From Glycera tridactyla (Eukaryota), in assembly GCA_965644265.1 (NCBI GenBank), contig OZ286466.1, positions 9,114,001 to 9,178,000 of the forward strand: a stretch of DNA of 64,000 bases, given 5' to 3'. Positions 1,888 to 63,271 of the stretch are shown here, piece after piece (position 1 is the first letter of the stretch; every line of letters starts with the position of its first letter). The position numbers and the translations under genes were made by a program. The notes beneath the pieces are model-generated. The model had not been told where the DNA came from and searched no databases. It saw nothing but the letters and a program-made list of their open reading frames with translations.

Positions 1888-2001
1888 ATATCGATGACTG
1901 TGCTCATATTCCCTGTGGGGAATTTGGCTCTTGTGTCGACGGCATTGCTAATTATACCTGTCATTGTCTGCAAGGATTCACTGGAATTCATTGTGAAACA
2001 A
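1888..2001 (+). CDS. Unit 1 exon A, calcium-binding EGF
   Basis: 114 nt; (D)[37 protein letters not shown]. Confidence 0.9.

Positions 2002-63271: not shown

What the first reader, a model, noticed from the sequence alone, without database searches (positions are those of the whole stretch)
1888..63271. Giant extracellular protein built from a 19-exon, about 750-aa super-repeat (12 EGF, 3 FN2, 1 LDLa, 3 Cys micro-linkers)
Seen: the same ordered 19-exon cassette recurs at a 14-16 kb period (751, 751, 749 and at least 543 aa) with no stop or terminal exon between units, implying one polypeptide of more than 2790 aa. Knowledge: EGF arrays occur in Notch, fibrillin and fibropellin, but I see none of their diagnostic partner domains (LNR/ankyrin, TB, CUB). 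I do not recognise a repeating EGF11-FN2x3-LDLa-EGF architecture in any named family. Inference: a lineage-specific matrix, adhesion or recognition protein that grows by duplicating a whole multi-domain block.
Basis: partly seen in the sequence, partly recalled or inferred. Interest (0 to 1): 0.8.

Follow-up and report, generated by a model that had tools for sequence, protein, structure and literature searches.

The report
Giant EGF-FN2 super-repeat matrix gene
This window is the middle of one very large, transcribed animal (probably annelid) gene for an extracellular protein. A 19-exon block of about 750 amino acids (EGF, fibronectin type II and LDLa-like modules) has recently been copied four times in tandem; this is a clean example of a gene growing by whole-block duplication, but it is built from ordinary modules and its function is untested.

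Summary
Four tandem copies of one 19-exon cassette lie at 1888-17314, 17812-31772, 32272-45127 and 47201-63271 (the last runs past the window end). The exon order is 11 EGF, micro-exon, FN2, micro-exon, FN2, FN2, micro-exon, LDLa-like, EGF. Every rebuilt exon has AG/GT sites, phase 1-1 and no stop, giving 751, 751, 749 and 543+ aa, exactly as reported.

Spliced contigs from two public runs show eight GT..AG joints. These include the 33-nt micro-exon and one L-to-A joint across a unit boundary, and they come from at least two units. dN/dS is about 0.2, so all copies are kept as coding sequence. Units 2 and 3 are hybrids made by unequal crossover.

All N gaps are intronic. Two sit in the L3-A4 intron, so the adjacency of units 3 and 4 and the true copy number remain unproven.

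The 'LDLa' module is only LDLa-like: below Pfam threshold, but 94% hhalign probability to true LDLa modules nearby.

The array sits in a same-strand locus of about 160 kb, with an older unit upstream and 10 EGF, 2 CUB and 5 canonical LDLa downstream.

None of the best 150 of 1585 FN2-like library proteins has this cassette.

The likely role, untested, is a calcium-stiffened extracellular rod with periodic collagen-binding FN2 triplets. The joined protein was never searched.

The parts
1888..17314 (+). Unit 1 (751 aa, 19 exons). A 1888-2001; B 2551-2664; C 3030-3143; D 3703-3816; E 4109-4273; F 5383-5562; G 6084-6197; H 6882-6995; I 7472-7633; J 7966-8079; K 8595-8750; m1 9337-9357; FN2a 10091-10240; m2 13182-13208; FN2b 13613-13780; FN2c 14974-15141; m3 15732-15764; LDLa-like 16387-16497; L 17201-17314
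   Evidence: Exon model (AG..GT, phase 1-1, no stops). Pfam. RNA-type contig X2 record 7 joins FN2c-m3-LDL-like-L with 0-1 mismatches per piece.
17812..31772 (+). Unit 2 (751 aa, 19 exons). A 17812-17925; B 18712-18825; C 19026-19139; D 19548-19661; E 20162-20326; F 21431-21610; G 22046-22159; H 22835-22948; I 23389-23550; J 23882-23995; K 24653-24808; m1 25420-25440; FN2a 26390-26539; m2 27458-27484; FN2b 27860-28027; FN2c 29699-29866; m3 30456-30488; LDLa-like 30844-30954; L 31659-31772
   Evidence: The joints A-B, B-C and C-D fit these boundaries exactly. Hybrid unit: A-C resemble unit 4, D-L resemble unit 1.
32272..45127 (+). Unit 3 (749 aa, 19 exons). A 32272-32385; B 33120-33233; C 33434-33547; D 33957-34070; I-like 34957-35118 in place of E; F 35227-35406; G 35900-36013; H 36334-36447; I 36988-37149; J 37639-37752; K 38437-38592; m1 39206-39226; FN2a 40087-40236; m2 41130-41156; FN2b 41561-41728; FN2c 43396-43563; m3 44153-44185; LDLa-like 44541-44648; L 45014-45127
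   Evidence: Hybrid unit: A-K resemble unit 4, m1-L resemble unit 1.
47201..63271 (+). Unit 4, the part inside the window (543 aa, 13 exons). A 47201-47314; B 48137-48250; C 48451-48564; D 48987-49100; I-like 49995-50156; F 50265-50444; G 50938-51051; H 59185-59298; I 59839-60000; J 60474-60587; K 61201-61356; m1 62046-62066; FN2a 63122-63271. The other six exons lie beyond the window, at window-scale positions 64465-70177 (locus L010).
17315..17811 (+). L1-A2 intron (497 bp), the unit boundary that is seen spliced out
   Evidence: Joint 17312-17810, GT..AG, side 113, in X1 record 4.
25462..25704 (.). Assembly gap inside the m1-FN2a intron of unit 2
   Evidence: The flanks are colinear with unit 1, where a CA microsatellite lies at 9365-9503.
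45128..47200 (+). L3-A4 intron, 2073 bp against about 500 bp at the other boundaries. It holds a GGT-rich minisatellite and two assembly gaps (46055-46226 and 46807-46938).
   Evidence: Unresolved sequence, so further units could be hidden here.
51117..58929 (+). 7.8-kb mobile-element insertion in the G-H intron of unit 4. It is absent from unit 3.
   Evidence: alignment break between units 3 and 4; long ORFs.
10473..12221 (+). Non-LTR reverse-transcriptase fragment with an internal 511-bp duplication, in the FN2a-m2 intron of unit 1 only
   Evidence: RVT_1, E = 3e-15.

Best explanation
The window is an internal stretch of one very large, transcribed gene of a probable annelid, encoding a secreted or surface-bound extracellular mosaic protein. 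Its core is a super-repeat of about 750 aa made of 19 symmetric (phase 1-1) exons: eleven EGF modules (most of calcium-binding type, four with long acidic, Tyr-rich first loops), a triplet of fibronectin type II modules set between short Cys-bearing linkers, a degenerate LDLa-like module and a twelfth EGF. Two older units (now units 1 and 4) gave rise to two hybrid units by unequal crossover, and all four copies have stayed under purifying selection. Inferred mechanism: the EGF runs form calcium-stiffened rods roughly 30 nm long. These rods space out FN2 triplets, which bind collagen or gelatin as they do in gelatinases and fibronectin, so the protein acts as a multivalent, periodic collagen/matrix cross-linker or tether. 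Because every exon is phase 1-1, gain, loss or skipping of a block keeps the reading frame.
For: Shown: the exon anatomy and open frames and the domain identities. Eight GT..AG joints appear in RNA-type contigs of two runs, including LDL-like/L/A/B in one contig and the 33-nt micro-exon. The contigs come from unit 1 (X2 record 7, 0-1 mismatches) and from unit 2 or 3 (X1 record 1 carries the unit-2/3 form of m3). dN/dS is 0.12-0.3 in nearly all blocks and unit pairs. Intron identity is 85-96%. The dS groupings are A-C {1}|{2,3,4}, D-K {1,2}|{3,4} and m1-L {1,2,3}|{4}. K-type exons occur 5 times in the genome, all at this locus. On the same strand the same exon design (114 or 162 nt, phase 1-1) continues directly after unit 4 with ten more EGF exons, then LDLa, CUB, cbEGF x2, CUB, LDLa x4 and EGF x2. 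30 of 48 EGF exons fit a calcium-binding EGF pattern if a long first loop is allowed. Inferred from established knowledge: FN2 clusters bind collagen/gelatin (MMP-2/-9, fibronectin), and tandem cbEGF modules form rigid rods (fibrillin, Notch).
Against: Only one contig (depth 3.8, one run) spans a unit boundary. Its L part has 10 mismatches to L1 and matches no L exon of the assembly. The runs are labelled RNA only by a guess. No start, stop, signal peptide or membrane anchor was found, so the gene's extent is unknown, as is whether the upstream unit (35 kb of transposons away) and the CUB/LDLa tail belong to it. The assembly is unresolved between units 3 and 4. No binding or localisation data exist. 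The Cys count of the linkers plus the LDLa-like module is odd (1 + 2 + 7), and this is unexplained.
Confidence: 0.62

Rival explanations
1. The units are separate tandem genes (one per 14-16 kb), each with its own promoter, signal peptide and stop, and not one polypeptide.
For: Tandem gene arrays are common in this genome (earlier notes). No full-length transcript was seen. Reading through any L donor meets a stop after two codons, so intron retention could end a protein there.
Against: An L-to-A joint with GT..AG ends lies in a contig that also carries LDL-like and B sequence. The L-A introns are only about 500 bp. Every A exon starts at an acceptor in phase 1, so it cannot be a first exon.
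Confidence: 0.08
2. The array is real but its copy number or order in this assembly is wrong (collapsed, expanded or mis-joined at the gaps), or it varies between individuals.
For: Two gaps and duplicated gap flanks sit exactly at the unit 3/unit 4 boundary. The expressed L variant joined to an A2-like exon is absent from the assembly, where only four L exons of 76% identity or more exist.
Against: The units differ by private transposon insertions, an E versus I-like exon swap, and dS of 0.05-2.0 in a block-wise mosaic. They are therefore not haplotype copies of one unit, and contigs from at least two units are expressed.
Confidence: 0.3
3. The units, or single exons, are used alternatively (cassette skipping), giving isoforms of different length rather than one obligatory product of more than 2790 aa.
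For: All 70 exons are phase 1-1, so any skip stays in frame. The depth of the contigs is low and patchy.
Against: All joints seen connect neighbouring exons, and no skipping joint was reported in the 4.8 kb laid. Contigs, however, drop rare forms.
Confidence: 0.15

Closest known systems
Gelatinase (MMP-2/MMP-9) collagen-binding domain and the fibronectin gelatin-binding region
   Same: A tandem cluster of FN2 modules (three per unit here, as in MMP-2/-9). The FN2 consensus is intact, with Pfam fn2 at 45-50 bits.
   Different: No protease or FN1/FN3 context. The triplet is broken by a 9-residue two-Cys linker, sits between EGF runs, and recurs every 750 aa.
Fibrillin/LTBP and Notch/fibropellin-type EGF arrays
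   Same: Long runs of one-exon, phase 1-1, mostly calcium-binding EGF modules. CUB domains lie downstream on the same strand, as in fibropellins.
   Different: No TB (8-Cys), LNR or ankyrin exons were seen in the Cys-rich ORF census of 284 kb. An avidin-like end was not searched. FN2 and LDLa-like modules are interspersed instead.
Coagulation factor XII / HGF activator
   Same: FN2 directly beside EGF in an extracellular mosaic built from phase 1-1 exons.
   Different: Those are single-copy modules ahead of a kringle and a serine protease. There is no super-repeat.
Super-repeat genes that grow by block duplication: apolipoprotein(a) KIV-2, DMBT1 SRCR-SID units, and titin/nebulin super-repeats
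   Same: A multi-exon block is duplicated in tandem with its introns. Hybrid units arise from unequal crossover, and there are hints of copy or sequence variation between individuals.
   Different: The block here is far larger and more complex (19 exons, 16 domains of three kinds, 14-16 kb), and the organism is a lophotrochozoan.
P0087 and P0056 (unnamed library proteins found with the FN2c exon)
   Same: They combine EGF and FN2. P0087 repeats an FN2-EGF-EGF block, and P0056 is signal peptide, FN2 x4, EGF.
   Different: Their exon peptides are only 35-55% identical to ours. They have no LDLa-like module, no 11-EGF run and no micro-linkers.
Giant FN2-mucin genes of the same genome (earlier notes s1-323737 and s1-345358)
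   Same: Same genome and the same expanded domain type. More than 120 FN2c-like exons, mostly on contig C42.
   Different: Those are FN2 beads on Thr-rich linkers without EGF. Identity to FN2c is at most 59%.

Membership tests
EGF / calcium-binding EGF (Pfam PF00008, PF07645, PF12947) | Six-Cys EGF fold signature scoring over the Pfam gathering score | tested here: met
   Exons C, G, J and L score 24.7-49.1 bits against 21.5 for EGF. Exons E, F, I and K score 29-39 bits for EGF_CA/EGF_3 against 27/28.5. Exon A is borderline at 21.3.
Calcium-binding EGF | N-terminal acidic D/N-x-D/N-E/D-C motif plus C-x-D/N-x4-F/Y-x-C (pattern recalled from PROSITE) | tested here: met
   18 of 48 EGF exons fit the strict pattern. 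30 of 48 fit if the first loop may be up to 25 residues.
Fibronectin type II (Pfam PF00040) | Four-Cys FN2 signature over the gathering score | tested here: met
   FN2a 44.9, FN2b 50.3 and FN2c 48.0 bits against a cut-off of 22.2.
LDL receptor class A (Pfam PF00057) | Score over Pfam's gathering score (24.1 bits) | tested here: not met
   Four of five unit exons gave no hit even at E up to 10. One gave 12.8 bits, E = 0.15. The exon was tested alone, because the joined m3 + exon has no reference.
LDL receptor class A (Pfam PF00057) | Profile similarity to true LDLa modules, and the C-D-G-x-x-D-C ... S-x-D-E ... C core | tested here: inconclusive
   hhalign against five canonical LDLa modules from the downstream tail gave probability 94%, E = 9e-8, over 25 columns. 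The only PDB match is an LRP2 LDLa module at E = 0.3. The C3-C4 loop has 3 residues instead of 6-7. The AF2 model had pLDDT 59.7 and was unusable.
Notch | LNR repeats, NOD and ankyrin repeats after the EGF array | tested here: inconclusive
   The Cys-rich ORF lists for window positions -75 kb to +124 kb show no LNR-like exon. Ankyrin repeats were not searched with a profile.
Fibrillin/LTBP | TB (8-Cys) domains between cbEGF runs | tested here: inconclusive
   No 8-Cys exon appears in the same ORF lists. No profile scan of every ORF was run.
Fibropellin | EGF array with CUB and a C-terminal avidin-like domain | not tested
   Two CUB domains are present downstream. An avidin-like domain was not looked for, and the gene's end is unknown.
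LDL receptor family (LRP) | YWTD beta-propellers flanked by EGF, clusters of LDLa, a TM segment and an NPxY tail | tested here: inconclusive
   No TM-like ORF lies between 95.8 and 104.8 kb. YWTD was not searched with a profile.

The most novel reading that the evidence does not exclude
The super-repeat is a copy-number- and sequence-polymorphic array, still being reshuffled by unequal crossover. Individuals would then carry different numbers and hybrids of 750-aa blocks and so make matrix or recognition proteins of different length and valency. Its EGF11 / FN2x3 / LDLa-like / EGF block would be a domain architecture found in no other described protein, acting as a periodic collagen-binding ruler.
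Probability: 0.15. Interest if true: 0.6.

Novelty: new variant of a known kind. Interest (0 to 1): 0.4.

Why it matters
The locus catches exon and domain shuffling in the act. A 16-domain, 19-exon block has been duplicated together with its introns, and the crossover break points can still be read. All copies remain under purifying selection, and the product is expressed. It also adds to the evidence that FN2, described as largely confined to chordates (PMC3308698), is heavily used in a lophotrochozoan genome. If the FN2 triplets bind collagen, the protein would be a natural multivalent collagen cross-linker with fixed spacing. As it stands it is a lineage-specific mosaic built from standard modules. 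That is expected in invertebrate genomes, so it is of moderate rather than high interest.

Tried and rejected
- Pfam on the LDLa-like exon gave no usable hit.
- An AlphaFold model of that exon from a 5-row alignment had pLDDT 59.7, so no fold search was run.
- The HMMER search of 1.84 billion representatives with the FN2c exon returned multi-FN2 proteins only. The best identity was 61%, and none had the cassette.
- Looking up P0087 and P0001 for their genomic source did not help with naming the organism or finding an ortholog.
- The ESM Atlas search returned only generic FN2 clusters.
- Four literature searches found no protein with this architecture.
- A hydropathy scan after the last EGF exon found no membrane anchor.
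- Haplotype mis-join was rejected because the units differ by private transposon insertions, an exon-type swap and block-wise dS of up to about 2.
- The word-index protein search was not used. It sees only proteins of 0.55-1.75 times the query length, and no query longer than a 60-aa exon has a reference.
- The spliced 751-aa unit, and the m3 + LDLa-like join, were not sent to any search or fold tool, because a joined model has no reference. All searches were done exon by exon.

Full report
**Where the window lies.** The window is G000:C18:9114001-9178000, plus strand, in a 2.04-Gb assembly of 207 contigs. The mitochondrial contig C207 is 15,366 bp and has all protein genes on one strand. The gene order is cox1, cox2, cox3, tRNA-Gln, nad6, cob, atp6, nad5, nad4L, nad4, rRNAs, nad1, nad3, nad2. 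From memory this is the conserved annelid arrangement, so the organism is probably an annelid. That is an inference, not a database identification.

**Checking the observation.** Self-BLASTN shows long colinear matches at offsets of about 14-16 kb, with introns as well as exons 85-96% identical. A census of Cys-rich open frames and a TBLASTN of unit-1 exon peptides against the window plus flanks give the same ordered series four times:
- EGF A to K
- FN2a, FN2b and FN2c
- an LDLa-like exon
- EGF L

Units 3 and 4 carry an I-like exon where units 1 and 2 have E.

I then fixed every exon boundary by splice site and phase:
- All 70 exons inside the window have AG..GT and are phase 1-1.
- None holds a stop, and no split codon is a stop.

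The three micro-exons are 21, 27 and 33 nt long:
- m1 lies between K and FN2a.
- m2 lies between FN2a and FN2b.
- m3 lies between FN2c and the LDLa-like exon.

All three are conserved in a much more diverged upstream unit, although the surrounding introns are not. The remaining six exons of unit 4 lie just beyond the window, at window-scale positions 64465-70177.

**Assembly gaps.**
- The gap at 25462-25704 lies in an intron, 21 nt after the intact donor of m1 in unit 2. Its flanks are colinear with unit 1, which has a CA microsatellite at that place.
- The gaps at 46055-46226 and 46807-46938 both lie in the L3-A4 intron. This intron is 2073 bp, against about 500 bp at the other boundaries. 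It consists of a GGT-rich minisatellite, and the 70 nt before the two gaps are identical.

No exon or reading frame depends on a gap. The assembly does not show that units 3 and 4 are adjacent, and more units could be hidden there. I did not try to fill any gap.

**Transcription and splicing.** One search for sequencing runs found two runs of one study. They hold 5-7% of the sampled words of 14900-19700, roughly what exons alone would give. Laying their contigs on that stretch gave eight joints with GT..AG ends that fit my exon boundaries to the base:
- FN2c to m3
- m3 to LDLa-like
- LDLa-like to L
- L to A
- A to B
- B to C
- C to D
- a second form of FN2c to LDLa-like that carries the 31 letters of another unit's m3

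One X2 contig joins FN2c, m3, LDLa-like and L of unit 1 with 0-1 mismatches per piece. One X1 contig of 278 nt holds 29 nt of the LDLa-like exon, L, A and 21 nt of B, so it crosses a unit boundary.

The runs are called RNA only by a guess, but precise intron removal at eight canonical sites is what spliced message looks like. At least two different units are expressed.

A caveat applies to the boundary-crossing contig:
- Its L part has 10 mismatches to L1 and matches none of the four L exons in the genome.
- Its A part has 2 mismatches to A2.
- Either the sampled individual carries a unit that the assembly lacks, or the contig mixes units.
- The splice junction itself does not depend on which is true.

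**Selection and history.** Nei-Gojobori estimates on aligned exon codons give dN/dS of about 0.2 for all unit pairs. The block values run from 0.12 to 0.3, and up to 0.6 where dS is very small. All four copies have therefore been kept as coding sequence.

dS groups the units differently along the cassette:
- In A-C, unit 1 stands apart (dS 1.6-2.0) from units 2, 3 and 4 (0.05-0.10).
- In D-K, units 1 and 2 (0.12-0.19) stand against units 3 and 4 (0.14-0.15), with 0.35-0.45 between the groups.
- In m1-L, units 1, 2 and 3 (0.14-0.17) stand against unit 4 (0.37-0.40).

So unit 2 is a unit-4-type head (A-C) on a unit-1-type body, and unit 3 is a unit-4-type A-K on a unit-1-type tail. These are the products expected from two unequal crossovers between two parental units.

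Private insertions also show that the units are distinct loci and not haplotypes:
- a reverse-transcriptase fragment in unit 1 (RVT_1)
- a 7.8-kb element in unit 4

**Domain identities.**
- Pfam confirms EGF, EGF_CA/EGF_3 and fn2 well above threshold.
- 30 of the 48 EGF exons fit a calcium-binding pattern if the first loop may be long.
- Exons E, F, I and K have first loops of 13-21 residues, rich in Asp, Glu and Tyr. These could be tyrosine-sulfation sites, but that is inference only.

The 'LDLa' exon fails Pfam: the best score is 12.8 bits against a cut-off of 24.1, and four of five copies give no hit. Other evidence is more favourable:
- A profile of the five copies aligns to a profile of five canonical LDLa modules from the downstream tail with 94% probability, E = 9e-8.
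- Its only match in the PDB is an LRP2 LDLa module, at E = 0.3.

It keeps the C-D-G-x-x-D-C and S-E-D-E-I-C motifs, but it has a three-residue C3-C4 loop. I call it LDLa-like. An AlphaFold model was too uncertain to use.

**The wider locus.** I fetched 140 kb upstream and 80 kb downstream.

Upstream:
- An older unit lies at window-scale -62958 to -33751, on the same strand.
- It has about 22 EGF exons (with repeated H-I pairs), then J, K, FN2a, m2, FN2b, FN2c, m3, LDLa-like and L, at 53-88% peptide identity to unit 1.
- Two VWA-domain exons lie at about -71.8 and -69.6 kb.
- About 35 kb full of retroelement ORFs separates this unit from unit 1.

Downstream:
- Directly after L of unit 4 come ten more EGF exons of the same 114- or 162-nt phase 1-1 design.
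- These are followed by LDLa, a CUB split over three exons, two cbEGF, a second CUB, four LDLa and two EGF, ending near +95.8 kb.
- No membrane-anchor-like ORF follows before an unrelated-looking pair of long ORFs at +106.9 to +110.8 kb, which carry PMP repeats and many TM segments.

Whether the upstream unit and the tail belong to the same message could not be tested. If they do, the protein exceeds 5,000 aa.

**Search for relatives.**
- K-type exons occur five times in the genome, all at this locus.
- FN2c-type exons at 87% identity or more occur only in the four units. More than 120 weaker FN2 hits lie mostly on contig C42, which fits the giant FN2 genes in earlier notes.
- A full HMMER search of 1.84 billion representative proteins with the FN2c exon found 1585 proteins. 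The best 150 are multi-FN2 proteins.
- The highest identity was 61%, and none carries the cassette.
- The nearest in spirit are P0087 (a repeated FN2-EGF-EGF block) and P0056 (FN2 x4, then EGF).
- Four literature searches found no described protein with this architecture.
- One review states that FN2 is largely confined to chordates (PMC3308698). This genome contradicts that as a generalisation.

These tests were by single exon. The spliced unit has no reference and was not sent to any search or fold tool, so an annotated ortholog in another annelid cannot be excluded.

**Most likely mechanism.**
- Shown: one transcribed gene region with a 19-exon super-repeat that was recently duplicated and recombined and is under purifying selection.
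- Inferred: an extracellular product. Every module is an extracellular disulfide-rich type, although no signal peptide has been located.
- Inferred: calcium-stiffened EGF rods of eleven modules separate triplets of FN2 modules. In gelatinases and fibronectin, FN2 modules form the collagen/gelatin-binding unit.
- The result would be a multivalent, periodically spaced collagen or matrix binder.
- The LDLa-like module may add a calcium-dependent acidic binding site.
- Because all exons are symmetric, unequal crossover or exon skipping changes the length without breaking the frame.

**Rivals considered.**
- Separate tandem genes: unlikely, given the L-A joint, the 500-bp boundary introns and the phase-1 acceptors.
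- Wrong or variable copy number in the assembly: quite possible, and compatible with the main reading.
- Alternative use of units: untested.

**Verdict.**
- The module is LDLa-like rather than LDLa.
- CUB and true LDLa modules lie downstream.
- Continuity across the unit 3/unit 4 gaps is unproven.

The finding is a new domain arrangement and a fine case of block duplication, but it is built from standard parts of a known kind of protein.

Noticed in passing
L010:3780-4894 (window-scale 67780-68894, just beyond the window): A 124-bp minisatellite, 9.0 copies at 97% identity. Each copy repeats the last two thirds of unit 4's LDLa-like exon, its GT donor and about 57 nt of intron. This places eight extra donor sites behind the real one. 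The would-be 67-nt exons are not a multiple of 3, and reading through the first donor meets a stop.
   Followed up: partly
window 200-1300: A 1.1-kb repeat with thousands of copies at about 99% identity in the genome (4315 first-look candidates). The copies often lie 12.5-12.7 kb apart in series, for example five on C1 at 2.217-2.268 Mb and one 12.5 kb upstream of this window. This looks like the terminal repeat of a very young 12.5-kb element or tandem array.
   Followed up: no
window 51117-58929: A 7.8-kb insertion in the G-H intron of unit 4, with same-strand ORFs of 661, 295 and 991 aa that give no Pfam hit at E of 0.001 or less.
   Followed up: partly
window 15866-16348: Within the m3 to LDLa-like intron, contig depth in the two runs jumps to 160-340, against 2-5 on the exons, with many variant letters and loose ends. 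This is an abundant, apparently transcribed repeat.
   Followed up: no
window 17200-17312 (as read in run X1): The expressed L exon in X1 record 4 differs at 10 of 113 positions from L1. It mixes letters of L2 and L4 and is absent from the assembly, which hints at an unassembled or individual-specific unit.
   Followed up: partly
window 11192-12221: A 511-bp direct duplication (99.6% identical) inside a non-LTR reverse-transcriptase fragment, in an intron of unit 1.
   Followed up: no
L011:5808-9036, L012:4602-9668, L013:325-498 (window-scale 79.8-94.5 kb): The five canonical LDLa modules of the downstream tail all have only four Cys. The first and third Cys, which pair with each other in the classical module, are both missing.
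   Followed up: no
L014:2869-6838 (window-scale 106.9-110.8 kb): Two long intron-free ORFs on the plus strand. One is 452 aa with Chlamydia-PMP-type repeats / beta-helix (E = 6e-10). The other is 751 aa with many hydrophobic segments and no clear family.
   Followed up: partly
L022:8163-8438 and L023:209-496 (window-scale -71.8 and -69.6 kb): VWA-domain exons on the plus strand, 7-9 kb before the first EGF exon of the upstream unit. They may be the N-terminal part of the same gene.
   Followed up: partly
G000:C207 (L028, L029): The 15,366-bp mitochondrial genome has all genes on one strand in the order typical of annelids.
   Followed up: partly
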